A stretch of DNA of 62,074 nucleotides, filler included, from Choristocarpus tenellus KU-1152 (GCA_964200185.2; 8 parts of 8 records of this genome joined end to end with filler, not necessarily neighbours in it), one strand, 5' to 3'; shown: positions 36,719 to 50,789, counted from the whole stretch's first letter. Program-made: numbers and translations. Notes: generated by a model from the sequence alone, not told the origin.

Positions 36719-36922
36719 NNNNNNNNNNNNNNNNNNNNNNNNNNNNNNNNNNNNNNNNNNNNTTAATTAATTAANNNNNNNNNNNNNNNNNNNNNNNNNN
36801 NNNNNNNNNNNNNNNNNNCCCACCTTTCGCCCTTTCCCCATCCCATCTTCCCCCCCCCTACCCTCAACAGGGGGGTCACCGCCTCCCCTCCCTTCCCTCC
36901 CCCCCCCCACCCCCACCCCCCG

Positions 36923-36970
<48 letters not shown>

Positions 36971-36974
36971 CTAG

Positions 36975-38989
36975 CAAATCTTGGCCTCCTATCCCCACAT
37001 TCGTTTCTGCCATGGGGAATTCATGCCCCAAGTGTTGCTTCTGCCCTTGACCAAGTCGAGATGGAGATCCTGGAGCAGGCAAACAGCACCACAGTGGAAA
37101 AGGTCCCTGGCAGACTTCACACCACCCATGCGATCACCCTCATGCACACAGTCGATCTACTGATGCATGAAGTAACCGCCCCAAGGGTAGACGGGGGGAC
37201 CCAGATGATCGGGGCTATCAGAGTGTCCAAGCTCTTCCACCTGGTATCTGGCCTTTTACTGGCCAATGATGGAAAGCTCTCGAGAGAGGAAAGGTCCACC
37301 CACAATGCAGTGTTGGGGAATATCCAGGAGTTGGTAGCACGGGTATTATAATGATTCCAGAGGACCAGCAGACGTCAGGGGCCCCCCAGAGATGACCCTA
37401 AATCCCATCAGGAACAAGCTGCAGCACTTGGCCACCACCATGGAGGTATTTCCAAGGTGGTGAATGTTCTCCTATCACAGCCCAAAGCTCCGGGGACAGA
37501 AGAGATATTCAGGGCACTGGTCCCCTAGCACCTACATGAGAATTCATGTGAGGTTAGCCATAATGGAAGCAAAGGAATACAGGGTCTGGGAAACAATAGT
37601 CCTGCCCCCATGAGGAGTAGGGTAGTACACCCCCACCTCCCTGCAAACGGCATTCATGAGAGCAAACAGCAATCCGCTCCAGGCCCCGATGGGATGCACC
37701 CCAGCCGTGTCTGATCGGCCATTACAACAGATGTTGGCCATGAAGAAGTGGTGCAGGTGCTTGCGAAGCTTTGGGAGCTAGCCTACAACCTCCCTGGACT
37801 CTTTACCTCCGGAGGTTTGGAAACTCCACTCAACCTCCTAACTGTCCGGAATTGGAGAGAAGTGCCGCCCAGTCACCTGTGATTCTTTCTTTAGAAGGGC
37901 ATGTGCTTCAGCCTTCCGTGCAGACTGGCTCCCCTACCTGGAGCAATACTTTGGCAAACAGGGCAGTTCGGCGTAGGGGTCCTAAATGGGGTGGAGCGTG
38001 CCCTACTGGACATTGGCCTAAGGAATGAGTGTGGCAAATGGGTCATAAGTCTAGATGGAAGAAACGCCTTCAACAGTGTATACTGCTCGACCTTCATTGA
38101 GGCTCTCCCTGAGACCCTACAAGGACTCCTACCCTATGTGTCCAAGGTGTATGGAGACACCCACGATTTTATTTCCCCCCTGGTTGAGGGAGGGATGAAG
38201 ATAATGCCATCCCCCTTGCCCCCCTCCCATATTGCATGGCAACCACCAAAGTCCTACAATGGGTCCAGTCTATCTTTGGACTCCAGGGGGTCTCCTCCTG
38301 AAGTTATCTGGATGATGGCTCAAAGTACCTGGGGAGGGGGGGTCTACGCCGGGGTGTCCATTGGGGCCCTTATGAGGAAAAGTGCACTTACATTATGCAT
38401 CCCACACATGCAACCAAATCACCCAAAAATTGTGACATGGAAAAATAGGCCCCAAATTGACAGTCGCTGCCACCCCCCAGATACTTTGACCCTGACACAT
38501 CCAACACTGTAAGGGAGATTAATTGCACCACAATACCTGCTTTTGAGCAGCTGAAAACTGAACTACACGAGGTAGGTATCACCTTCAACATGGAAAAGAC
38601 TTTTGCTGCACCTCCCCAGGGCCACCAGCCCACGCCTTCAGAACTAGAACTTCTGGCCACAGCGAGAATCAACCTGGCCCTGGGCCCAAATGGTTTTGTT
38701 ACTCTAGGGACTCCAGTGGGAACAAATAAATTCATCCAAGCCCAGATGGCTGAGGTGATCGAGAGCCCAGGGTCACGAATGTTGGCCACCACACACCTGA
38801 GTGAGATGGAGGACAAACAAGTTGCCTGGCTCCGCAACTCCTGGCCCCTCTCTTCCCACTTAGGCTATTTGGGAAGGGCCACTCCCCCCCACCTGGCACG
38901 CTCCACCATGGAACAAATAGACAACACCTCACCGTAGACACTGGAGGAGATAATGGAGGTAGCAGACTCAGTGGGAGCCACTGACTTAG
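36975..38989 (+). mobile_element. CRE-clade-like non-LTR retrotransposon, RT region (decayed)
   Basis: GQFGVGVLNGVERA, LDGRNAFNSV, YLDD at 38305-38316, TLGTPVG; frameshifts and stops. Confidence 0.8.
38317..38492 (+). mobile_element. MITE family A copy inserted in the YLDD codons of a LINE RT
   Basis: TIRs; TSD tgat/tgac. Confidence 0.9.
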
Positions 38990-39244
38990 GAGTCGAAAGT
39001 ATCTTAGAGGGTAGAGCCGCGTCCGTTTGGGGGCCAAAATCCAATGTTGCGATTTTGATGTAATTTTGGCTATTGTATTTGTTAGGAAGTGTCAATATTC
39101 TTGTTCCAGACACACCTTTTAATAACGTATACATTTACTTACTCCGAAATGTTTCAGAGTAGAAAAATGTCATAAAAAACCCGTGGGAAGTCAAGACCCA
39201 AACAGACAAACAGGGCAAATCTCGTACCCTCTAAGATACTTTCA
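38990..39244 (+). mobile_element. MITE family B copy at the junction of the CRE LINE and the mariner relic
   Basis: Family B body; right end lacks the last bases; no TSD. Confidence 0.85.
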
Positions 39245-39249
39245 AATAA

Positions 39250-40258
39250 ATCTGATGGGGTACTCCAGGTAACACTCAGTATTGATGGTGACGTCAACCT
39301 TGTACTCCTTGCCCTTCATGTGTCACGCTGTAGTCCATTGCACCTTTGTGACGCAAACCGCCAGATCCTGATCTTGCCATCGAAATCATGGGAAGGACCT
39401 AGGCACAAAACGATGGAGATGAACATCACTTTGGGAATGTGACTCTTGTGCAGTACCTTCGCTGAGCCCACCTTTTCCTCTCCCAGGAGTATGCACACCA
39501 TCTCTCGTTTGTGGATGAGGTAGAACTACGTCTCGTCGATGTGAATGGTATTGAGGCCAGTCCTGTAGGGTTTGTGGTTGCAGGAGATCTGGTTGAGGAT
39601 GAAGTCCACCCTGTTCTTCTGAAAAAAAGAAAGGGTAGGGGTGACGCGCCGCTAAACCCTCGTTGCCCCCACGACTTCAAGCCAGCGATGAAGCTTTGAG
39701 CTTCTAACTCTGCAAGACCTGCTCCAGCAAGCTTTGCTAGTTTCATTGGCATAAAATTGGACGGCCGTCCAGATCATGCTTGTGATTTCAGGGAGATGAT
39801 ATTCCCCCTCTCTGTTTTTTAACGCACACCCACACCCATCTAGGATGTCTCTCTCTCACTCCAAACTATCTCGCCAATTTAGATCCCACATCCCTCGGGA
39901 ACCTCTCATGGCCCAGAGGAAGACCCAATGCGCAACGCAGAGCAAGTGTGGTTCGACCTTCCTCAGTCAGGTCGCAGTTCTTTCCTCGAGACGGTAGGCT
40001 TCGTGCCAGAGATGATGGGCTGTGAGGGCTCGCCATGAGAGTTGGAAAAGTGTTGTGCGGCTCCACACTGAAGCAGGAACATTCAAAGATGATAATATGC
40101 CCCTTTCTGTGTTCCATGAATTCGGAATTGTTTCAAACAGAATTCTAGTTTTTTAATGAAAAATATTCCAAGGAATCTGAAGCAAAAGTCAATTATGAAA
40201 TCGGTGGTCATCCCAAAGAGCTACAAATTAACGGTCCAGCCTTATGGGACAGAGGGAG
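39250..40258 (-). mobile_element. DD39D/Stowaway-type mariner transposon, 5' part (decayed)
   Basis: Terminus CTCCCTCTGTCCCATAA at 40258; IHIDET*FYL, HKSHIPKVMFIS, FDGKIRIW. Confidence 0.75.
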
Positions 40259-40976
40259 TGTAAGGGTGACTCCAAAAATGGTGTTTGTTTGTGCCGAATC
40301 TTACTCCTGACGGCAAGACTTTCTGAGTATATCTTACTCCTGATTCACCATATACCGCGATTGGGGTGGCCAGTCCTGGAGAGTCTACACACTTAGTAGT
40401 AGTGTATAACTGTGAATAAATGAATGCATAACACAATTTGTGTTCGCAGTGGTGATAATTTCACTCACCCCTTTACCTTTGTCAAACATATTTATTGCCA
40501 ACATAACAATGAACTCGTGAAGCCTTATAGGTCACAACACCCCAAGTGTACAAATCTGAGAGGTTCTAAGGTAATCAACATTTCGAGTGTCGAGAGCTGT
40601 CCAAAATCCTCTCGAAGTCAAAACCCATTACTAGTTAAAATACCATGCACTACCAAGTCACAGTGTGATGACCAGCCTGTTACCCCTCAAAAAGAAATAG
40701 AAATACTGTTTACGCAATGCTTACCATTGGTGGATTTCTCTGTTGTGAGTACTCCTCTAAAGGTCTAGTGATTCTAATGCTATAAATGAAGTCACAGCAA
40801 GATGCACACTAAACAACCCAAGGGGACTCCACTTGAGCATACTGTGATAGTGAATGCAAAATGAAGCATAAAATAAACACACATACACACACACAAAATA
40901 TCCCACAAAGAGACCTGGGCAGGCTCCTTCACAAATGCAGTGCAGAATTGTACGTTTTCAACAAGAGATGACAATG

Positions 40977-43900
40977 TTAGGACTTGTCATTGCTTGCAGC
41001 TTGTGTCGTCTCCTCCCTCTTATCACCGCAACTCATCCATTCTGGCCAACGCGTGTCTACAAGCCCTTCAACCTGTTCCGTGATATCTGCAGATAGATGG
41101 GACGAAGTATGTGGACAGGGCTCGGGTTAGTTGAGTAGAGAATGAGGGTGGAGAGGTGGAAACAAGGGACACACTGTCCTCCCTCATGCATATAACTTTT
41201 TTTTACCGTCTACTGTTTTGCTTCCCTTGTGAAACTGTTCATTTTTAGATTAAGAAATGTGGGATGCAAACAACGAGAGTGTACAACACTGAGATGACCA
41301 CAGTCAGTTTCTGTTAAAAGGGCAATCAGTTCGATATCCACCACTTTATTTCGTTTACTATGCCAGTTGTGTAGGTTTTTGCCTTGGCCACGATCTTACA
41401 TGCATTTATTAAGTCAATCTTGTATCAGTATGTCTGTACGAAGGGTGAAATGAACAGAAGCGAACACATGGCAAGAAGATGTACTGAAGGTTATTATACC
41501 ACCGCTCACCAAAAGAATGATATGAGCAAAAAACAAGACCAATGTGCATCATGACTCAACAAGCATGTGAGCCTTCCCACCTATAACAAAATGTATCACT
41601 ATATGAAGGTAGAAGTCTTTGCCATGAAAAGAACACCCTTGGTCATGTATGAAATCTCGGATACAGGGTAGGTTGACAATTTTCATAACAAAACACAGGC
41701 TGCAATGTGGTGTACTCCAGAGTACTCCTTTCATCTCTACAGCAGGGTGAAATTACTTAGGGGTAGGTGTGGTATGCTGTCTGTTTGTTGAGCATATTAG
41801 GGAGGAAACAGTGACCTAATGTTGCATGGCACCAGAAAAATTTGGTGGAACCCAAATACTTATTACTAGTAGGTGACTTGTCAAAAAAATTATTTAACAT
41901 GAGGAGACAGAAAGATACACTGGAAGAAATAAAAAGCAACGAAAATAACAACAGAAGAATGTGTCAGTATGTAGAGAAGAATCATTACATGCTACTCCTG
42001 GAGAGTGCACTGCATACTCTGCCCTGCAGTGATTTCGACAAATTGAAATAGGCAACGAAAATGTCAGCTGTATCCTTTCCGCTACTCAAGTCCCCCTCCA
42101 AACAGCATATTCTCTTATCTATTGAGAGAGCTGCAGGCAGACTGCATAAGGCACCCCCCAGTAGAGTCCTACAGTAGTATGAAGCTCAAATTAACAAAAC
42201 AAGTAACTTTGCCTTCTCACTTCGTTCGACAGGTAAGGTACCGTATGATCACTGCAGCGATATACTATATGGAAACACTCGGACTTGGGGTTTGCAAGCG
42301 CACCTTCTATTAGAGCCTTTCGTGATGGTCTCCACCCCGCCCATGGCGTCTTGTCCAGAATCTCAAACCATGACTTTGCCCATGGATTGTCACTTAGCCC
42401 TGTCCGTGGTTTCAGAGGAATGGGACAATATGGATTGCCCAACTCCAGTAAATTGACCTTCCCTCCACCAGTGAGATGAACGATGCCTGGGTTGGTGCTA
42501 ATTTCCTTCAGCTCTGCAGTAGTGAAGAGCGCTGGTTGTACAAGACTACCAGGATTATCCCCTCCACGGAATGCTAGGTATGTTCCAGCACCCTGTACAT
42601 TCCATTTGGCACTCAGTGATGTCCATCTCCCATGGAAAACACTGTTAAGGATGTCTTGGTCCATGAGGGGTAGGTTGTCTGGTGTGAACATAAAGGCTAG
42701 ATCCCGCATTCTCTCAGTCTCCTCGCGAAAGGTGTGCATGTCAATAATGAGCACACCCGCATTGAAGTAACTGTCTGAAGCGAGACCATGATGATACACT
42801 CCATCTCGGTACCCTTGAACACCACATGGGCAACCAAAGTCCCTGCCATCCATTGATGAAGTTTAGAAGGGACACAGTAGATTTAAGCGAGAATGACCTT
42901 TCACCAACTCTCCTCTTCAGCTACTGTCGTATTTTGAAGTGTATTTGCGTATGGAATATGTTGTGGACTTTCTTCAAGCTGCAAGTATAACACCCCAAAC
43001 AGACATAGGAAAGAGACCATCCATTATATTGATGATGTCACACATATTACCCAACTGTTGGTTCCGTTCCTTATTGTACGTAAGGATCGCTATTATTAAT
43101 AGTACAAGGTCAGGTGTCTTAGCTGTACATAATGTCAACAACTGAGGGTAATATATAAGCTAAAACCTGACTGCACAGGGTGATCTCTTCATGCTTATTG
43201 ATCAGGAGCTGTGTCGACTTAGATAAAATCCCACTAGCATGAACTGAATGAATGTCTAGTTGGTGATACAGAGTGAATAGGCGACCCTTTGACAATGAGC
43301 CATGCAAAGACTTAAGGTCACGGGATATGTTCAAACACAGAAATATCCTATCATATGGCTCAGGCAGCATTTAGACAATAGGATGCAGTTGCTACACAAC
43401 CTGCCTTCCTCCCTCACTCATACCGCTGCAGAGTGTTACAAATCTCAGCATGACTCAAGCAGGTGATGAACTATCATATCACTCTTTTGTCTACAATTTT
43501 CCTCAAGTAGAACATTACATATTTGTGACAAGCTCTTTAAATCAATGCCCGACAACAAAGAAAACCACAAATGTTGTACCCTCATTTGACCCACCTTACA
43601 GCCGCAAGAGCACTCTGAGGTTCCCGACTATCCCATAGGGCACACACATCCTTCCGAACAATCACATCAGCATCCAGGTATAAGACCTGATAGGCAAGGC
43701 ATAAATAGGCAAGCACAATCATATCAAGACAACATTGATCGTGGGTGGTATTGTGTGCCAAACCTTGCATGGGATGTGGACCTGGTAGGTCAACATCAAT
43801 TCGTATTTTGTGTATCATCAAATGTGAACAAAACATTCAAATTATGCATAGTTCTCACACATCAAATATGAAAAATAGACAAAACTACATGTATCCATTT

Positions 43901-46900
43901 GCTGCATATGCATTGTTCTTTTGTTGAGTGTACAATTCAACGCATAGTTCATGACCTAACCGCATACTACTTCCGTATAAGTACTATGCTTGAGACCATG
44001 TGGCAGAGGGGGAAGGGGCTACACGTTCCAAAGGGGGGTGCCTGTAAGCCCCTGGGAATCTGCAGAGGGGAGATACCTGTGCAGCAGAAAAAACATTAAC
44101 CCCACAGTATGTATGATATGCATAGTACTACCCTGTGAACACTACAATTTTTCATTAACATTTGGTATGTAGTTGAGTCACTGTAAAATATATCTATGAC
44201 TAAATCAAAGGAATGTGCACATTCGACCTTGATCAAAACCAAACAAAGGTAGACTTGGTGCTGATGGTCTAGCTGGCAAGCACTATAGATAGCACTCTTA
44301 CGCTCTGAATCCTGGTGCATAGTCATAATATGGTGCAATAGCATGAAATTTGAGGGTCTGAGTGGCAATGAGTGATGGTATAGCTGAACACAACGCTCAA
44401 AAGCAAGGCAAACCAAGACAAACCAGCTCAGACTTTATAGTAGCTCAGCATGTAGCAGAGTGTGAAGCGTAAAAGCACCTCTAACCATAGATGGAGCTAG
44501 TCAAGGCCAAAGTGAGAAAATAGAACAGTGGTTCATACAAAGTTTAGGTTGCTGGATGGAATATTGTTGACTTATGAGTCTATGATTTAGTGACACCTGT
44601 AAAAGTCTATACCAAAGATTCTAGGAGCGGCAAAACAAACTCAGTGGCAGAACCAATAAAGTGCATCCTTTACATGTCACGGTACCTTGGGCATGGAGGT
44701 AGGCAAAACTTCCCCTAGGGCAAGCTTGGCGTACTGCCCACCCATGGGCCACAGGTGGTCACTGTCCAGTTCGCACAAAGGGACACCATCGCGCCAGCCT
44801 GGTCCATCAACCCACTCAAGGGACACAGACCCGAGCATTTCATTAAGCTTGCATCTCGATTCCTGGGTCAGACCAATGTCGATGACAATGATCCTGAGGT
44901 CAAGCGGCCTGCGCCCAAAGTCAAAACAGTTGATACATGATGGTCAACCAGCACGTGTAATGTACACTTTGTGACTTGGAGGCAATTTAGAGTAGGAAAA
45001 CAAATAATATGATATACTCAAAGAAGAGGAGGATTGGTTTAAAGTATCTCGGGGGGGAGGGGGGTCTATACCAGGGGGTCCATTTGGGTCCTGTCCAGGA
45101 AATGTCTATTTACATTATTCATTTGACATATGTAACCAAATCACTCCAAAATTGCGACATGAAAAAATGGGCCCCAAATGAACAGCCGCTACCCCGCCCA
45201 GATACTTTGAGACAAAACTAAAATGGAGCCAAAGTATCTTAGAGGGTACAGCCGCGTCCATTTGGGGGTCAAAATTCAATGTTGCAATTTTGATGTAATT
45301 TTGGCCATAGTGTTTGTTAGGAAGTGTCAATATCCATGTTGTGGTCACACCTTTTCATAAGGTATACATTTTACCTACTCTGAAACATTTTGGAGTAGGA
45401 AGATGTCATAAAAAACCCCATGGGAAGCCAAGCCTCAAATGGACAAACAGGGCAAAACTCGTACCCTCTAAGATACTTTCACTCAATGACAACAGGACCA
45501 CAAGAACAAGTTGAGGGACACAGAATGCAGAAGTCGCACTTGTTGATGCATCAATTTGTCGCTGATTTTTCCCTACTAGAATAGTGCTTATCATCATGAA
45601 GGCCATCACAAATCAAAAGCCTACGTAGAATTTGAGCAATATAATGTCCAAGTGCACTTCTAACTTTCCTAGGCAGAGACTTGTATTTAAGCCAGTGTAT
45701 AGCACCGACCATCATCTCACACCTGCTGCAGGTGTCGATAAGGGAGCACAGAGCCACAGCCAGTTCTTTTGCAAAAAGTTCATCTCCTGCAAGCACCACA
45801 GGGATAGTCTCTTCCTGGGGTGAGGGGAAGTTGTACCTTTGGGGTATGGTCTTCCGCACAAATACCTGTTAACATCCAATCAAAACAAGTTGCAAAAATG
45901 AAGGTGATGTGCAGATTGTGTGTCCAATGCACCATATGAATATATATGAAATGTCCCAGACAATGCACAGTCCAAGCAGGCTTCACACTAGCTCTCTGTA
46001 CTAGGACAGAATCCTCTGTCTCTACATCACCATGACTGCATTATTGGGGTGAGTCAAGCTTCATTTTAATCCGCAAAGCAGCCTGCAATGAGCAAGCAAC
46101 TTCATTTGTGCCAACTACCATAGAGGTAACACAATTCTACACACAAGAGGAGAGCAAGCATCCTACAACCTGAAATACACTTTGGGTTACCTGCAAATAC
46201 TTTGCAACAGTGTCACCGCAGGAGGTCCATCAAGGTGTGTGAAAGTACCATAATGAACAGCTAAGACAAGACCATAGCTCTGACTCCTGGCCCTACTCCA
46301 TGTCGTAACATGCACCTAACGCACTAGTGTGAACCTTACTTTAGAGTACTTTCAAATGACCAAATAGCACCTTGGCACTTGGAGGCATTCTCAAGAGGGT
46401 AAACATGAAAGTAAAAATGCTGCATATCACACTTGCGCTTAGAATGAACAGGCTCCCTTCTGTGTATGATATTCTCTCTAAACCATCAAGAAATACAATG
46501 CTACTAGCAAGCATTTCAAGGCTAGTATGCCTCATGCACACAGACCTGGTATCCTTTGTGTACAATTTCTATCTCCTCTCGTGCCACAGACAGAAACGTG
46601 TCAATGCCCCGCTTCGGATGATCAGGGGCATCCATCGACACAGGGTTGTGTGGACACTGCTCAGAACGAGCAGGCATTTCATAGTCATCAAGTAGCATGT
46701 AGCCACCCTCGTTCAAGACTTGCCATGCCATGAGACAGTCCTCTAGGGTGGCCATAGTATTGTGGTCACCGTCTATATAAACAAAGTCAAAGGTTGTTCC
46801 AGATGGAAGGATGTGCTGACAGAAGGCCTGCAGAGGTAGAAGTAATGAGGGTGACCAGGAGAGAGTAGAAGAAGACAAGGAAATCAGAAGGCATAGATAT

Positions 46901-48844
46901 ATAGAGTGAAATTGGATATACGAAGGAAAACCCCTGAACAAGGTGATACCCTTCTTCTTGCCTGGAGAGAGAAGAAAGGAAGGACACGAACACGGTGTCT
47001 ACTCCCTGTGAGCCTAAGGTTAAACTCCAGTTTGCGCCGTCTCTCCCGGCCAGGTCCTCTGTTTGCTGGTCCATCACCAAGTATGCAGTGTGTGGGCAAC
47101 ATGAGGGAGAGACAAGAGGTTGTCAACTTTGAACCGTTTTCATCGAGTTTGATGGTACAATAAGGACTTGGAGTAAAATTGAATGCCTCTCAAGACATGC
47201 AATATACAGCAGCACAATTTAGCAATTATATCCTCTAATCGGACTTCACAGAAGACTGATTCACATGGCTAAAGAGCCTCCAATCATGCCTCAAAAAGAG
47301 GTGTGGTTCTAACTGTAACTGCAACTATAGACCACACATAGTGTCAACAATATGTGCCGGGCAAGATAACCATTTGTATTTAGCAATGATCTAAAGTGAT
47401 ACTTCTATAGCACTATGTGTATCCATAATCAAGCATCAACTGCACCATACCTATTTGTAAGGGAAACTGGTAAGAAAAGAGTGAGGCTCAAAGTATCTTG
47501 GGGGGGGGGGGGGGGGGCTGTCCATTTGGGGCCCATTTTTCCAAGTCGCAATTTTGGGTGATTTGGTTGCATGTGTCAGATGGATATAATGTAAGTGCAC
47601 TTCGCTTTGTCAGGGCTCAAATGTACACCCTGGTGCAGATACCCCCCCTCCTCCCAGATTCTTTTGAGCTTGACGATCTGGAAGTTTCTGTAACCCCAAG
47701 CTCTGCAGTTCATGGCATACTAACAGTCAAAGTGGTCCACTAGCCACAGCTTGCTCTCCTCTTGAGTGCACAGGTTGCGCAGCCACCAGCTTGCACTCAG
47801 ACCCTCCCAGCTCCCAATCTCCAGAACATTGAAAGATTTTTTTGTCCCAAGGACACCAGGTATACAAGGCTTTTTTGCCACCTGTTGAAGCACGGCAGGA
47901 GCAACAAGCTTCTTCCATACAGGGAGTTGCCCTCGGCACCAGTCCTGACCAACTGTAAATTCTATGGGCAGAATGAAGGGCTGAACAAGAGATGCACCAC
48001 GTAAACTTCTTGGTCCAGGGCTTGAGGAATCCTCCTCTAAGTTACCTGCAAGCTCCAAAATTGCACTAGCGCAGGGTGACAGGAAGGAAACCCAACCAGC
48101 GCCCTCCACACCTCCGTCAATCGCATCTCCTACATCCTCCATCCCCAGGACGTTAAGGAGTGCGCGCAACCATGAACCATGCGTCACCAGGACGAGTCCG
48201 TCGTGTGAGTCCAACCTGCGACGAAGGCAGCGGACTGCAGTATCTACTCGAAGCAATAGATCTTGTTGCTCTTCATACTTGTTGGGGACAGGCCCTAGGC
48301 TGTTCTCCTCGGAGACTGCTGGCAAGATCACCTTTCCTCCTTTCCTCCACTGTAGTGTTGAGTCGACTTCATGCTGTCCAGTCGTGTCACTCCTTCGACA
48401 GCAGAAGATTTCCTTGGTGCTTAATGTACCCCCAGGAAAAGCATATGCATCATCGTACTCGTAAGAGCCCTTGTGGGGCTGGCGCAGCACTGCTTCAGCA
48501 CCACCCTCGACCTTTCCAAACCACTTTCGACGAAGCTGCTCACATAGAGCAGGGTCCACTTCCACGATAGCCCCATGCACTTCCGCCAAAACAATCGCTG
48601 TTTGTACACACCTCAGAGAAGGGGAACAGACCACACGTCTTATCTTTGCACTTTGACTGTTAGCAGATCCTCCTTGCCTAGACACGTTGAGACGCCTGGC
48701 GAGATTCCTCACTTGCTTGAAACCCTCTAGTGTGAGAGGATCGTCCCATGGACGTGGAGGGCGTTGAGCTGGGAGCCACCAGTCTTGCCATGGGGAGCCC
48801 TTGTCCACGCCTGCGCGCTGTGCATGATGTACAAGGTGGATCAT
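40977..48844 (-). CDS. 8-exon gene: histidine phosphatase (PGAM-fold) + class I SAM methyltransferase (Methyltransf_24-like) + glycosyltransferase family 8 fusion, ~870 aa
   Basis: Hand-spliced exons: 48844-47725, 47065-46962, 46827-46546, 45865-45723, 44908-44686, 43686-43595, 42842-42304, 41086-40977. They total 2613 nt with phases 1,0,0,2,0,2,1 all consistent and no internal stop. Phosphatase motifs: IHLVHHAQR, RPWDDPLTLEG, SPSLRCVQTA, LVTHG. MTase motifs: VLEIGSWEG, VDHFD, FDFVYIDGDH, GGYMLLDDY. GT8 motifs: IPVVLAGD, LYLDAD, YFNAGV, DQDILN, WNVQ, IVHLTG. The start codon and last exon are less certain. Confidence 0.85.
45036..45213 (+). mobile_element. MITE family A copy (intron 4 of the fusion gene)
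   Basis: Family A body and TIRs; no clear TSD. Confidence 0.85.
45226..45484 (+). mobile_element. MITE family B copy (intron 4 of the fusion gene)
   Basis: TIRs; 4-bp TSD aatg/aatg. Confidence 0.9.
47485..47670 (-). mobile_element. MITE family A copy (intron 1 of the fusion gene, inverted)
   Basis: TIRs; 3-bp TSD tga/tga. Confidence 0.85.
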
Positions 48845-49749
48845 CTCTTGGGCGGTCCAAATCCAAGCTGTAGCAGAGTTTGAGTCACCAACATGTCCAC
48901 GTGTGTGCACCGTGCGTCCACCAACATGTTCGATAGGCAATCACATCGTCGTGGAATATCATTAAAGGATAGAGACCAGCGTTAGTTAGTGTTGTTTGAA
49001 GAAATGTAAGGTTGTTAGATGTATGGATGGTTTTGTTTTGGACGATGATATAGTTAAGGGTTGGTAATAACCTAACAGGGTGTCGGGTGAACAGTGAATC
49101 AATGATATACGATCTAAGCACTCTTATATTACTGACGTGTGTGTCGAATCCAGGGTTTAGCCCAGGCAGCATCTATCGTGGTGAATGTTGAGGCAAGTAT
49201 GGTAGGCACTTGATTGCGGTGCATACCCTATTGTTCATTCATCTGAACTGTCCGAACGGTGGATTGGTGGTTGGCTGAAGGATGATGCAACCGAAGATGT
49301 CCAAATACTCCGCCACACAAGAAAGGTCAATAGACCGTTGCTGAAAGGACCCGAACACACTTCCTACTTTTACCCTAAAGAGCGACTGGGGAAATCAACT
49401 CACTAACTCTATCCGCTAATGATGGGTTTGGTAGATTGTATATCTCAAACTGTCACAGGTGCAACTGCAATGCCGAAGTTGAACTTGGCACGGTCGTTTA
49501 ATTGCCACGCAAATAGACTTCCACTTTTTCTGATAGACAGTCCTCAAGTGTGCTACGAGACTACGAACTTGTTGCAATGAACAGTGTGAATGTCTATATT
49601 CACAGTTGAAGGTCCAGGACAAGACGTTTCCATCAATGAACAGAATAGGATATATCAAAATATATCAAACTCTAATCTTTGACAACTGGCTCTCTAACGA
49701 CTGCACTAGCACAAACCCCATCGAACCATCAATAGGAATGTATGGCTGT

Positions 49750-50400
49750 GAGAAAGGAAATGCCGTTTTGGTAGAGGAACAATTTCCGTTTAAAAACATT
49801 GGATTTGGAACCTTCTAAGCGCGTATGTTTATTATTTTCAAAAAGAGACGTTTTATCCATTCCATTTCCTCGATACAATTTTCTCCATATTCTTAAAAAT
49901 GAAGCAATATTAGAAATGATTCGCATATATTCCATACACGGTTAGTACGTCATCTCCATGCATGTCACAAGATTATATACCCATACAAGAGGATTCGAAG
50001 ACTGCAGAAGTGGAGAGAAAATATTATTGTTTCGATATTCGAAAGGTCTCAAGTAGTTCATAGATCAAGGAGACATACATCAAGATAGTATAAAATAATT
50101 GATCAGATTTACAACGTTTGATGTTTTTGATATCAGATTGAAGTTGGGGTAAGAAGATGTAATGTATTGCCAATTTAACAAGAGTCTTCTTTGACGTATA
50201 TGTTGCGGATATTGGGGCGATGTAATGGATATCTTCAACACTTAGTTGGAGAGGGGACACATCAGAGTAGCAAAAAGTATACGATATGATTCGAAACTCC
50301 TGACATTCGAACCAATTGTTTACCTGATATATATGTCCGAGGGATACCCACCTATAATTCTAACATATTCTAACTAGTTCATATCAAGGAAATGGGAGGA
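49750..50400 (+). pseudogene. Possible Ty3/gypsy RT relic
   Basis: IPIQEDSKTA and FDVYVADI resemble KTAF and VYVDDI in order; many stops. Confidence 0.3.
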
Positions 50401-50789
50401 TGTAAGGTGAGCAAACACAATCGCGTAACCACCAAAACCATAAATAAGGAATGTTAGGTAGACCACATAAAATGGTGGGTTTAAAGTTTAACGACATTGG
50501 TAGTAAGCAGTAGTAGATGTAATTGCATGACCTGTAGGAATATATGGAGAAATAGATATAACACATAGTGTTCTTATGATTAGGATATTTTACTTCTTTA
50601 GGGCTAACAACGACATATATATAGTTTTCATTGGTTTCCNNNNNNNNNNNNNNNNNNNNNNNNNNNNNNNNNNNNNNNNNNNNTTAATTAATTAANNNNN
50701 NNNNNNNNNNNNNNNNNNNNNNNNNNNNNNNNNNNNNNNCATACATATTTTACCGTAACTGTCCGATAGAGTTGGAAGAGTCTAATCGA

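What the first reader, a model, noticed from the sequence alone, without database searches (positions are those of the whole stretch)
40977..48844. Three-enzyme fusion: histidine phosphatase + SAM methyltransferase + GT8 glycosyltransferase in one spliced gene
Seen: eight exons splice in frame into one ~870-aa ORF. The phosphatase and the MTase motif I share exon 1, and the MTase end (YQ|VFVRK) and the GT8 start share exon 4, so the fusion does not depend on a guessed long-range join. Established: branch-1 histidine phosphatases dephosphorylate small substrates, Methyltransf_24-type enzymes are class I SAM-dependent, and GT8 enzymes are retaining DxD glycosyltransferases that include galactinol synthase. 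Inference: a single-polypeptide pathway that glycosylates, dephosphorylates and O-methylates a small metabolite or glycan, by analogy to synthase/phosphatase osmolyte pathways. No signal peptide is visible from the predicted start, suggesting a cytosolic protein. I do not know of this three-domain architecture being described.
Basis: partly seen in the sequence, partly recalled or inferred. Interest (0 to 1): 0.8.

Follow-up and report, generated by a model that had tools for sequence, protein, structure and literature searches.

The report
Phosphatase–methyltransferase–glycosyltransferase fusion gene, brown alga
A real, transcribed nine-exon gene of the brown alga Choristocarpus tenellus encodes one 907-residue protein that joins a histidine phosphatase, an O-methyltransferase and a GT8 glycosyltransferase; the same fusion occurs in a few other protists and marine metagenomes, and no member has a known function.

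Summary
On the minus strand, exons between 49224 and 40977 splice in frame into a 907-aa protein. It is identical to the deposited model CAM9284767.1, "unnamed protein product [Choristocarpus tenellus]". Pfam finds His_Phos_1, Methyltransf_24 and Glyco_transf_8, all above their curated cut-offs.

Contigs of one public run (X2) skip five of the eight introns at the exact annotated borders, including a GC-AG intron. Exon depth in X2 is 10-100 times intron depth, so the gene is expressed. The methyltransferase-to-GT8 join was not seen directly. Three things support it: X2 contigs end exactly at both borders, the last strand of the methyltransferase fold is encoded after the join, and homologues carry the same junction in uninterrupted ORFs.

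The architecture is not unique. It recurs in a choanoflagellate transcriptome and in marine metagenome contigs, sometimes permuted or with an added GT2 domain. A two-domain methyltransferase-GT8 family is widespread in mushroom-forming fungi. None is characterised.

In this alga alone the catalytic RHG motif reads HHA, so phosphatase activity is doubtful. The GT8 domain resembles bacterial LgtC, not galactinol synthase. The most likely function is synthesis of an O-methylated alpha-glycoside or glycan; that is inference only.

The parts
49137..49224 (-). Coding exon 1 (residues 1-29 plus one base). It holds the annotated start ATG at 49224.
   Evidence: Exact reconstruction of P0001. An X2 spliced contig joins 48867 to 49137, with CT..AC ends on the plus strand, which is GT..AG on the minus strand.
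47725..48867 (-). Coding exon 2. It encodes the whole histidine phosphatase domain, a linker, and the methyltransferase N-terminal part with SAM motif I (LEIGSWEG, 47824-47801).
   Evidence: Uninterrupted ORF with Pfam His_Phos_1 and Methyltransf_24 positions 1-33. X2 contig record 14 covers 47725-48867 with no differences.
48821..48829 (-). Codons for His43-His44-Ala45, at the place of the catalytic Arg-His-Gly motif. The Arg is replaced by His; the nucleophile His44 is kept.
   Evidence: In alignments of 34 and about 45 homologues, R-H is 90% or more conserved and only this protein has H-H. The X1 (DNA-like) and X2 (RNA-like) contigs agree with the window here.
46962..47065 (-). Coding exon 3 (SNRGPGRERRRKLEFNLRLTGSRHRVRVLPFFSLQ), the middle of the methyltransferase. 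Its donor is GC (CAG|GCAAGA).
   Evidence: X2 spliced contigs join 47065 to 47725 and 46827 to 46962. The peptide aligns with homologue P0007 (QMRGAGKERHSKLCFNLSLTGIGGKVTVLPYFSYT).
46546..46827 (-). Coding exon 4. It encodes the methyltransferase core with the DGDH and DDY motifs and ends at ...HKGYQ.
   Evidence: Pfam Methyltransf_24 positions 62-105. X2 record 12 covers 46544-46825 joined to 46960-47065.
45723..45865 (-). Coding exon 5. It encodes the last methyltransferase beta-strand (VFVRK), a short linker and the first GT8 strand (IPVVLAGD). This is the exon that physically ties the two domains.
   Evidence: The AF2 model places a strand at residues 540-544. The YQV.V.K..(6)FP junction is conserved in all eight aligned homologues, including single-ORF ones. 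X2 record 10 joins 45722 to 44907.
44686..44908 (-). Coding exon 6, the N-terminal half of GT8.
   Evidence: X2 joints 44907/45722 and 43684/44684. Alignment to LgtC residues 3-99.
43595..43686 (-). Coding exon 7, with the GT8 DxD motif (LYLDADV; D-A-D codons at 43674-43666).
   Evidence: Pfam GT8. It aligns with the LgtC stretch LYLDIDV.
42304..42842 (-). Coding exon 8, the C-terminal half of GT8 (DQDILN, VHLTGG).
   Evidence: Pfam GT8 E 1e-12. The junction AAVR|DFG is continuous in homologues. It was not covered by the reads call.
40977..41086 (-). Coding exon 9 (DITEQVEGLVD...NDKS, stop TAA at 40979-40977).
   Evidence: Part of the deposited model. IEDITEQVEGLV aligns with Bryopsis IEDVRAQVIEVV and P0007 VTDLQQQFQALL. 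There is no RNA evidence here.

Best explanation
This is a genuine, transcribed nine-exon nuclear gene of Choristocarpus tenellus. It encodes a soluble 907-aa protein with three enzyme domains.

1. Residues about 38-300 form a branch-1 histidine phosphatase of the eukaryotic Sts/tau55/ecdysteroid-phosphatase type.
2. Residues about 325-545 form a cation-dependent class I SAM O-methyltransferase (Methyltransf_24, COMT/MeT1-like fold, with DGD and DDY acidic motifs).
3. Residues about 560-870 form a retaining, DxD-type GT8 alpha-hexosyltransferase of the bacterial LgtC/LPS type.

The protein belongs to a small, taxonomically scattered clade of phosphatase-bearing proteins: choanoflagellates, the green alga Bryopsis, and marine metagenomes. 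That clade is sister to a large methyltransferase-GT8 family of Agaricomycete fungi.

Inferred mechanism: the GT8 domain transfers an alpha-linked hexose from a UDP-sugar to a glycan or small acceptor, and the adjoining methyltransferase O-methylates a sugar hydroxyl of that product. The result would be an O-methylated alpha-glycoside or glycan, probably made in the cytosol. The methyltransferase is the constant hub of the family. The phosphatase is an accessory module that has decayed in several lineages. In this alga it carries HHA instead of RHG, so it is at best a weakened phosphatase and may act only as a binding or structural domain.

Shown: the gene structure, its expression, the identity of the domains, and the recurrence of the fusion. 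Inferred: substrates, order of steps, and cellular compartment.
For: Gene model and expression:
- The nine exons translate exactly to P0001.
- X2 contigs skip five introns at the exact borders. Exon depth is 540-985 and intron depth 8-81.

Fusion:
- The phosphatase and methyltransferase motif I lie in one ORF.
- The terminal methyltransferase strand is encoded in the same exon as the GT8 start.
- P0007 (829 aa) and P0070 (882 aa) carry the same three domains in uninterrupted ORFs on metagenome or Logan contigs.
- Salpingoeca infusionum transcript P0016 has the same three domains.

Domain types:
- Pfam scores are above the cut-offs.
- GT8 matches LgtC at E 1.3e-15, with LYLDADV aligned to LYLDIDV and DQDILN conserved.
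- The methyltransferase model (pLDDT 92.9) matches cation-dependent O-methyltransferases at Z 16-18. These include the sugar O-methyltransferases MeT1 (Z 17.4) and SpnH (Z 16.0). DGD and DDY align with MycF.
- The phosphatase model matches tau55, Sts-1/2 and EPPase (E 1e-10 to 2e-7), and the atlas search agrees.

Family structure:
- A tree of the methyltransferase domain separates the phosphatase-bearing clade (SH-aLRT 93 in the drawn tree; 99 for the smallest well-supported set holding the Choristocarpus row) from the fungal clade.

Location:
- No transmembrane segment is present.
Against: - No member of the family has any biochemical or genetic characterisation, so the function rests only on family analogies.
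- The exon 4/exon 5 joint itself was not listed among the spliced contigs, and an intron-retaining contig exists there at depth 33.
- Arg43 of the RHG motif is His, so one of the three presumed activities may be lost.
- The new 5' exon encodes a weakly hydrophobic N-terminus (MHRNQVPTILASTFTTIDAAWA|KP) that could be a poor signal peptide. No predictor was available, so cytosolic location is not secure.
- No orthologue from any other brown alga appeared. A foreign origin, by transfer or contamination, is therefore not excluded.
Confidence: 0.55

Rival explanations
1. The fusion is real, but in Choristocarpus it works as a two-enzyme protein (methyltransferase plus GT8, as in fungi). The phosphatase domain would be a catalytically dead remnant kept for folding, regulation or binding of a phosphorylated ligand.
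For: - RHG reads HHA and the following Glu is Gln (RHAER becomes HHAQR), only in this protein.
- The domain has visibly decayed in Bryopsis P0017, in P0071 and in Salpingoeca infusionum P0016.
- The domain is absent from the large fungal family.
- Its model has only pLDDT 70, with a roughly 50-residue disordered insert.
Against: - The nucleophile His44, Arg47, Arg115, Glu139 and His259 equivalents are all retained.
- A His at the Arg position still offers a positive or H-bonding side chain.
- The domain is under enough constraint to score above Pfam's cut-off.
Confidence: 0.3
2. Two separate genes (phosphatase-methyltransferase, and GT8) were wrongly merged by gene prediction. The first would end at the stop six codons past the 46546 donor, at 46524-46522.
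For: - The 46546-to-45865 joint was not among the listed spliced contigs.
- An unspliced contig spans that intron.
- Read-through of the donor gives ...YQVCVHEAY-stop.
- Two-domain phosphatase-methyltransferase proteins exist elsewhere: P0005, P0006 and Monosiga P0009.
Against: - X2 contigs end exactly at both splice borders, and exon depths are similar on both sides (985 and 719) against 33 in the intron.
- The exon after the join has no start codon before the GT8 strand and opens right after an in-frame TAA.
- That exon encodes the final strand of the methyltransferase fold.
- The junction sequence is conserved in uninterrupted homologous ORFs.
Confidence: 0.04
3. The contig is not native brown-algal DNA. 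It would be either a eukaryotic contaminant of the culture or a recent horizontal acquisition, which would explain the lack of brown-algal orthologues.
For: - The best named relative is a green alga (Bryopsis, 43%); the other relatives are metagenomic, choanoflagellate or fungal.
- No other brown-algal protein appeared in three searches.
- The assembly is highly fragmented, with N50 of 6.6 kb (PMC11468063).
Against: - Two introns carry dispersed repeats whose summed contig depth is 1e4-1e6 in all three runs of the organism, so the contig shares its repeats with the dominant genome of those libraries.
- Eight spliceosomal introns of 134-1217 nt argue against a recent bacterial or viral transfer.
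- Unique-sequence depth is even across the contig.
Confidence: 0.12
4. The enzyme acts on proteins, not on small metabolites or free glycans. It would be a cytosolic protein-glycosylation module (GT8 as in glycogenin or Skp1 Gat1) coupled to an Sts-like phosphoprotein phosphatase.
For: - The closest solved folds of the phosphatase domain are Sts-1/2 and the TFIIIC tau55 domain. From general knowledge, Sts-1/2 are protein tyrosine phosphatases.
- The protein is soluble.
Against: - The GT8 domain matches LgtC-type oligosaccharide transferases, and no glycogenin appears up to E 0.1.
- The TM-scores to Sts and tau55 are only about 0.5.
- The same fold class includes small-molecule phosphatases: EPPase and GpgP Rv2419c are also listed.
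Confidence: 0.08

Closest known systems
Agaricomycete 'glycosyltransferase family 8 protein' (Methyltransf_24 + GT8, about 540 aa; for example Phanerochaete carnosa P0106 and Trametes, Mycena, Amanita homologues)
   Same: The methyltransferase-GT8 order is the same. The YQ.hhhK-FP junction is conserved. Identity is 30-34% over about 60% of the query, with E 1e-50 to 1e-62. The invariant methyltransferase motifs and the DxD motif are shared.
   Different: These proteins have no phosphatase domain. They form a separate clade in the methyltransferase tree. They are also uncharacterised, so they lend no function.
Three-domain homologues: P0007 (Logan ERR2843959), P0070 (JGI metagenome 3300021338) and Salpingoeca infusionum EP00049_P010137 (P0016)
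   Same: They have the same His_Phos_1 - Methyltransf_24 - GT8 order. Identity is 34-35% over 93% of the query for P0007 and P0070. P0007 and P0070 are single uninterrupted ORFs.
   Different: P0007 and P0070 keep the canonical RHA motif. The S. infusionum copy lacks R-H and has an insert of about 200 aa before GT8. The source organisms of P0007 and P0070 are unknown.
Neisseria LgtC (alpha-1,4-galactosyltransferase, GT8; PDB 1g9r/1ga8)
   Same: It is the best solved relative of the C-terminal domain (E 1.3e-15 over residues 3-210). The DxD and DQDILN motifs align.
   Different: LgtC is a single-domain bacterial LOS enzyme. Donor and acceptor specificity cannot be transferred at this level of identity.
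Mycobacterial polymethylated polysaccharide pathways: MGLP (GpgS, the histidine phosphatase GpgP/Rv2419c, glucosyltransferases, O-methyltransferases) and MMP (ManT, MeT1, MeT3)
   Same: This is the only known system I could name that combines a branch-1 histidine phosphatase, glycosyl transfer and sugar O-methylation in the cytosol (PMC3240985). MeT1 and Rv2419c both appear among the structural matches of the respective domains.
   Different: There the proteins are separate. The glycosyltransferases belong to other families (by general knowledge GT81 and GT4, not GT8). The structural matches are generic, with TM about 0.45-0.6. This is a 'works like' analogy only, not membership.
Sts-1/Sts-2 (UBASH3), insect ecdysteroid-phosphate phosphatase, and the yeast tau55 histidine phosphatase domain
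   Same: These are the closest folds to the N-terminal domain (Foldseek E 1e-10 to 2e-7). The motifs W.DPPLT..G..Q and SP..RC.QTA are of the kind seen in this domain's homologues.
   Different: Those domains are fused to UBA/SH3 or TFIIIC modules, not to glycan enzymes. They keep the RHG motif.

Membership tests
Histidine phosphatase superfamily, branch 1 (PF00300) | Profile score above Pfam's curated cut-off | tested here: met
   46.3-49.8 bits against a cut-off of 21.7.
Histidine phosphatase superfamily, branch 1 (PF00300) | Catalytic RHG motif: the Arg and the nucleophilic His | tested here: not met
   The motif reads H43-H44-A45. The His nucleophile is present and the Arg is replaced by His. 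R is conserved in 90% or more of 34 aligned homologues. The base calls are supported by the X1 and X2 contigs.
Histidine phosphatase superfamily, branch 1 (PF00300) | Second Arg, acid/base Glu, and C-terminal His of the phosphate pocket | tested here: met
   Alignment positions R12, R80, E104 and H224 (residues 47, 115, 139 and 259) are invariant or 90% or more conserved, and are present here.
Histidine phosphatase superfamily, branch 1 (PF00300) | Alpha/beta fold of the superfamily | tested here: met
   The AF2 model (pLDDT 70, pTM 0.76) matches tau55, Sts and EPPase at E 1e-10 to 2e-7 with TM about 0.5.
Methyltransf_24 / cation-dependent class I O-methyltransferases | Profile score above the cut-off, and SAM motif I | tested here: met
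   65.9 bits against 26.3 on P0001. LEIGSWEG is invariant across 49 homologues.
Methyltransf_24 / cation-dependent class I O-methyltransferases | Acidic metal-binding residues (DGD ... DDY) | tested here: inconclusive
   D140, D168 and D169 are invariant in alignment A2, and they align with MycF DGD and DDY in a weak match of E 0.3. That these residues bind the metal is from my memory of TylF/MycF-type enzymes and was not verified here.
Methyltransf_24 / cation-dependent class I O-methyltransferases | Rossmann-like O-methyltransferase fold | tested here: met
   The model has pLDDT 92.9. Z is 18.4-16 against Coxiella OMT, TrmR, MeT1, CCoAOMT and SpnH.
Glycosyltransferase family 8 (PF01501) | Profile score above the cut-off over the whole domain | tested here: met
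   87.7 bits against 24.3, covering profile positions 4-247 of 253.
Glycosyltransferase family 8 (PF01501) | DxD metal/nucleotide-sugar motif and the DQD motif | tested here: met
   LYLDADV aligns with LgtC LYLDIDV, and MDQDILN with QDQDILN. D666 is invariant.
Glycosyltransferase family 8 (PF01501) | C-terminal His of the metal site (H..G..KPW) | tested here: inconclusive
   VHLTGG aligns with IVHFTG of the homologues, but KPW reads KPR here. The LgtC alignment stops before this region.
   The solved-structure search lists LgtC, WbbM, other bacterial GT8 and UGGT. No glycogenin appears up to E 0.1. NCBIfam's best match is LPS 3-alpha-galactosyltransferase.
Synthase/phosphatase osmolyte pathways (TPS/TPP, SPS/SPP, GpgS/GpgP) | A glycosyltransferase that uses a phosphorylated acceptor, paired with a phosphatase specific for its product | not testable with these tools
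   Only enzymology can show this. By general knowledge the known pairs use GT20, GT4, GT81 or GT55 synthases, not GT8.

The most novel reading that the evidence does not exclude
A eukaryotic, single-polypeptide counterpart of the mycobacterial polymethylated-polysaccharide logic. The GT8 domain would build or extend a cytosolic alpha-glycoside on a phosphorylated primer, the histidine phosphatase would remove the phosphate, and the methyltransferase would O-methylate the sugar. This would give a previously unknown methylated glycoside or oligosaccharide in brown algae, choanoflagellates and some green algae. The fungal methyltransferase-GT8 family would be the enzyme behind the O-methylated glycans of mushrooms.
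Probability: 0.1. Interest if true: 0.7.

Novelty: new variant of a known kind. Interest (0 to 1): 0.4.

Why it matters
Three points give this moderate weight.

- It defines a conserved but uncharacterised enzyme family. The core is methyltransferase plus GT8, present in well over a hundred mushroom-forming fungal species. A rarer clade adds a phosphatase and is scattered across brown and green algae, choanoflagellates and marine plankton.
- Fused domains usually act on the same pathway. The family therefore points to an unknown route to O-methylated alpha-glycosides. To my knowledge the enzymes that methylate eukaryotic glycans are largely unknown, and my literature searches found none for fungi or algae.
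- The family offers natural 'deletion series' that could be used to work out what each domain contributes: phosphatase intact, mutated, decayed or absent; domain order permuted; GT2 added.

For the brown alga itself the finding is modest. It is one expressed orphan gene with no known phenotype.

Tried and rejected
- **My first exon-3 guess.** I placed this exon at 47013-46922 with GT-AG borders; it was in frame and gave an 867-aa ORF. It was wrong. X2 spliced contigs and homologue P0007 show the real exon is 47065-46962, in another frame and with a GC donor.
- **A seven-exon model reading through the 42304 donor to the stop at 42191.** I rejected it in favour of the deposited last exon, because IEDITEQVEGLV aligns with the homologues' C-termini. 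There is no RNA evidence for either ending.
- **Sequencing runs.** The look-up of sequencing runs reported no run on record as RNA. Laying the three holders nevertheless showed that X2 behaves as an RNA library.
- **Literature.** Searches for the domain combination, for Pfam name pairs, and for fungal or algal methylated-glycan enzymes found no description of this family. A brown-algal cell-wall gene survey (PMC11468063) mentions neither GT8 nor any methyltransferase.
- **Flanking ORFs.** Pfam on the flanking ORFs 37901-38937 and 39429-39752 gave nothing.
- **Fragmentary brown-algal orthologues.** A search with the methyltransferase domain alone found only relatives at 35% identity or less.
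- **Joined sequences.** I did not send any self-joined spliced sequence to a search tool. Exons were searched by reference, and the full-length protein was used only as the database entry P0001. In scripts, exons were concatenated only to check frames and identity to P0001.
- **Complex prediction.** Not attempted; no binding claim is made.

Full report
**What is there**

The piece (36819-50639, 45.8% G+C) is a whole 13,821-bp contig. All long ORFs with domain hits lie on the minus strand.

- ORF 47720-48940 carries His_Phos_1 (E 4e-13) and the first 33 positions of Methyltransf_24.
- ORF 46525-46941 carries positions 62-105 of Methyltransf_24 (E 1e-8).
- ORFs 43585-43836 and 42194-42853 carry GT8.

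A search of 1.8 billion representative proteins with the exon-by-reference query window:47726-48844:- returned a 100% identical 907-aa protein, P0001. The collection names it CAM9284767.1, "unnamed protein product [Choristocarpus tenellus]", on a contig of 13,821 bases. C. tenellus is an early-branching brown alga.

I reproduced P0001 exactly from nine exons: 49224-49137, 48867-47725, 47065-46962, 46827-46546, 45865-45723, 44908-44686, 43686-43595, 42842-42304 and 41086-40977. Seven of the eight introns are GT-AG and one is GC-AG. Exons are 52% G+C and introns 42%. From Met38 (48844) this gives 870 aa in eight exons.

My own first guess for the small third exon was in frame but wrong (see the Tried and rejected section).

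**Is it transcribed as one unit?**

No run is on record as RNA. When the three holders were laid on 43300-49299, run X2 behaved as an RNA library.

- Its contigs skip 48867>49137, 47065>47725, 46827>46962 (the GC-AG intron), 44908>45723 and 43686>44686. These are exactly the annotated borders.
- Its depth is 540-985 on exons and 8-81 in introns.
- X1 and X3 are flat (5-26) across exons and introns alike, apart from the repeat-bearing bins, as DNA would be.

Five of the eight introns, including the new 5' intron, are therefore confirmed, and the gene is expressed.

It was not in the listed joints. What is seen there:

- X2 record 12 starts at 46544 and record 10 ends at 45868. Each is at the splice border plus the two or three letters (GT, CAG) that the spliced and unspliced paths share.
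- An intron-retaining contig (45839-46573, depth 33) provides the competing path that would break the assembly graph at that point.
- Depth on both sides is alike (985 and 719).

I read this as use of both splice sites, and very probably a join between them. It is indirect evidence. Introns 7 and 8 lay outside the 6-kb limit and rest on homology only.

**Independent support for the fusion**

- Homologues P0007 (829 aa) and P0070 (882 aa) have the same three domains in the same order, in uninterrupted ORFs on a Logan contig and a JGI metagenome contig.
- A complete ORF from the Salpingoeca infusionum transcriptome (P0016, 966 aa) has them too.
- In the alignment the junction HKGYQ|VFVRKTIPQRYNFPSP...IPVVLAGD matches HKQYQVLVRKVVETGFNFPHP...LPACVFIV and its equivalents in all eight sequences.
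- An AlphaFold model of residues 325-548 (pLDDT 92.9) places the last beta-strand of the methyltransferase fold at 540-544 (VFVRK). That strand lies after the exon junction, in the exon that also starts GT8.
- The exon after the junction opens directly after an in-frame TAA and has no ATG before the GT8 strand.

**What kind of domains**

*GT8.* The best solved relative is Neisseria LgtC (E 1.3e-15). LYLDADV aligns with LYLDIDV, and DQDILN is conserved. No glycogenin is listed up to E 0.1. NCBIfam's nearest model is LPS 3-alpha-galactosyltransferase, far below its cut-off. The domain is therefore an LPS-type retaining alpha-hexosyltransferase rather than a galactinol-synthase relative.

*Methyltransferase.* Twenty-six columns are invariant over 49 homologues, including motif I and the DGD.H and DDY motifs. 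The fold matches cation-dependent O-methyltransferases at Z 16-18. Among them are two sugar O-methyltransferases: mycobacterial MeT1 and spinosyn SpnH. There is also a weak sequence match to MycF over the DGD...DDY stretch.

*Phosphatase.* The model is of moderate quality (pLDDT 70, with a disordered insert at about residues 160-210). It matches the tau55, Sts-1/2 and ecdysteroid-phosphate phosphatase domains; mycobacterial GpgP (Rv2419c) stands at rank 29.

In the alignment of 34 homologues, the catalytic Arg-His of the RHG motif is conserved in 90% or more. This protein alone reads His43-His44-Ala45 (RHAER has become HHAQR). Arg47, Arg115, Glu139 and His259 are kept. The X1 and X2 contigs agree with the window over this exon with no differences, so this is not an assembly slip in the window. 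Those runs may, however, be the data from which the assembly was made.

No transmembrane segment exists. The RNA-supported first exon encodes MHRNQVPTILASTFTTIDAAWA|KP, which is only weakly signal-peptide-like. I could not test it. The homologues have no such N-terminus.

**The family**

A word-indexed search with P0001 gave 205 hits.

- Five hits carry all three Pfam families: P0001 itself, P0070, P0007, P0072 and, P0016.
- P0072 (a Tara Oceans contig) and P0020 have the permuted order GT8-phosphatase-methyltransferase.
- P0002 (1823 aa) and P0003 (1633 aa) add a GT2 domain between the methyltransferase and GT8.
- P0005, P0006, P0012 and Monosiga brevicollis XP_001742281.1 have the phosphatase and methyltransferase only.
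- Most hits are proteins of about 540 aa with methyltransferase plus GT8, from Agaricomycetes (Trametes, Mycena, Amanita, Phanerochaete and many more) at 30-34% identity.
- The best named hit is Bryopsis sp. BSKO_03362 (43%). Its N-terminus is a decayed phosphatase remnant.

A quick maximum-likelihood tree of the methyltransferase domain separates the phosphatase-bearing clade from the fungal clade, which has SH-aLRT 99. In the drawn tree the fork for the phosphatase-bearing clade has SH-aLRT 93, and the smallest well-supported set holding the Choristocarpus row has 99. Choristocarpus sits next to P0070/P0007, P0002/P0003 and Bryopsis. Several branches are long, and the tree is short-search only.

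No other brown-algal protein appeared, either full-length or as a fragment. Native descent with loss, transfer, and contamination all remain open. Against contamination, two introns carry dispersed repeats (for example 45231-45481, also at 38996-39244) whose summed contig depth is 1e4-1e6 in every run of the organism.

**How it most likely works**

Shown: one expressed polypeptide with an apparently intact GT8 site, an apparently intact SAM/metal O-methyltransferase, and a phosphatase domain that lacks one of its two signature residues.

Inferred from the families:
- The GT8 domain transfers an alpha-hexose from a UDP-sugar.
- The methyltransferase O-methylates a hydroxyl, probably of that sugar.
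- The methyltransferase is the constant partner: it occurs with the phosphatase alone, with GT8 alone, or with both. It is therefore the hub of the family.
- The phosphatase is dispensable in fungi and decaying in three lineages.

The nearest mechanistic precedent for phosphatase plus glycosyl transfer plus O-methylation is mycobacterial MGLP/MMP synthesis. There GpgP is a branch-1 histidine phosphatase (PMC3240985) and MeT1 is a sugar O-methyltransferase. Those are separate proteins with other glycosyltransferase families. The comparison is a "works like" analogy, not membership.

My confidence levels are:
- about 0.9 that the fusion gene is real and expressed;
- about 0.4 that its product is an O-methylated alpha-glycoside or glycan;
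- about 0.3 that the phosphatase domain is catalytically inert in this alga.

**Novelty and verdict**

The architecture already sits, unnamed, in public protein sets from several organisms, so it is not unique. I found no paper on it, or on the large fungal sister family. I rate it a new variant of a known kind (multi-domain glycan-modifying enzymes), of moderate interest (0.4).

Its value lies in defining a testable family with natural domain-loss variants, more than in this single algal gene.

- No self-joined spliced sequence was sent to any search tool.

Noticed in passing
window 38996-39244 and 45231-45481 (intron 5): There are two copies (84-89% identical) of a dispersed repeat of about 250 nt. 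Its summed contig depth reaches 1e5-1e6 in all three runs, against 5-20 for unique sequence, so it is a very high-copy SINE- or MITE-like element of this genome.
   Followed up: partly
window 47504-47557 (intron 2) and 45146-45199 (intron 5), inverted; G/C run at about 47500-47515: This is a second repeat family (87% complementary arms) next to a homopolymer run. Its contig depth is 2e4-8e4. X1 contigs break on both sides of it.
   Followed up: no
window 46828-46961: This is a GC-AG intron (donor CAG|GCAAGA) of 134 nt, confirmed by a spliced X2 contig. A plausible GT-AG alternative in another frame (47013-46922) is not used.
   Followed up: yes
window 45839-46573 and 47036-47538: X2 also holds unspliced contigs across intron 4 (depth 33) and part of intron 2 (depth 81). 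That is a few percent of exon depth, and could be pre-mRNA, intron retention or DNA carry-over.
   Followed up: no
window 37901-38937 (+): Two ORFs (203 and 115 aa) look like a decayed reverse transcriptase by eye (...DGRNAFNS...), but they have no Pfam match at E 0.1 or below. They lie downstream of the gene, on the opposite strand.
   Followed up: partly
window 36876-37082: This is a C-rich low-complexity stretch at the contig end (G+C 63%, GC skew -0.37) that gives a poly-Gly ORF on the minus strand.
   Followed up: no
L004:246-2891 (Tara Oceans scaffold) and P0020: These homologues have the three domains in permuted order (GT8 - phosphatase - methyltransferase). This is an independent rearrangement of the same domain set.
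   Followed up: partly
L003:2292-7763 (JGI metagenome 3300069309) and P0003: These are giant relatives of 1823 and 1633 aa with phosphatase - methyltransferase - GT2 - GT8. The L003 copy lies next to an epimerase gene on a compact, intron-free contig. The source organism is unknown (microbial eukaryote, giant virus or bacterium).
   Followed up: no
L001:2976-5099 (-): The three-domain homologue P0007 is followed, tail to tail, by a 707-aa GT2-family gene. This hints at a glycan-synthesis gene neighbourhood.
   Followed up: no
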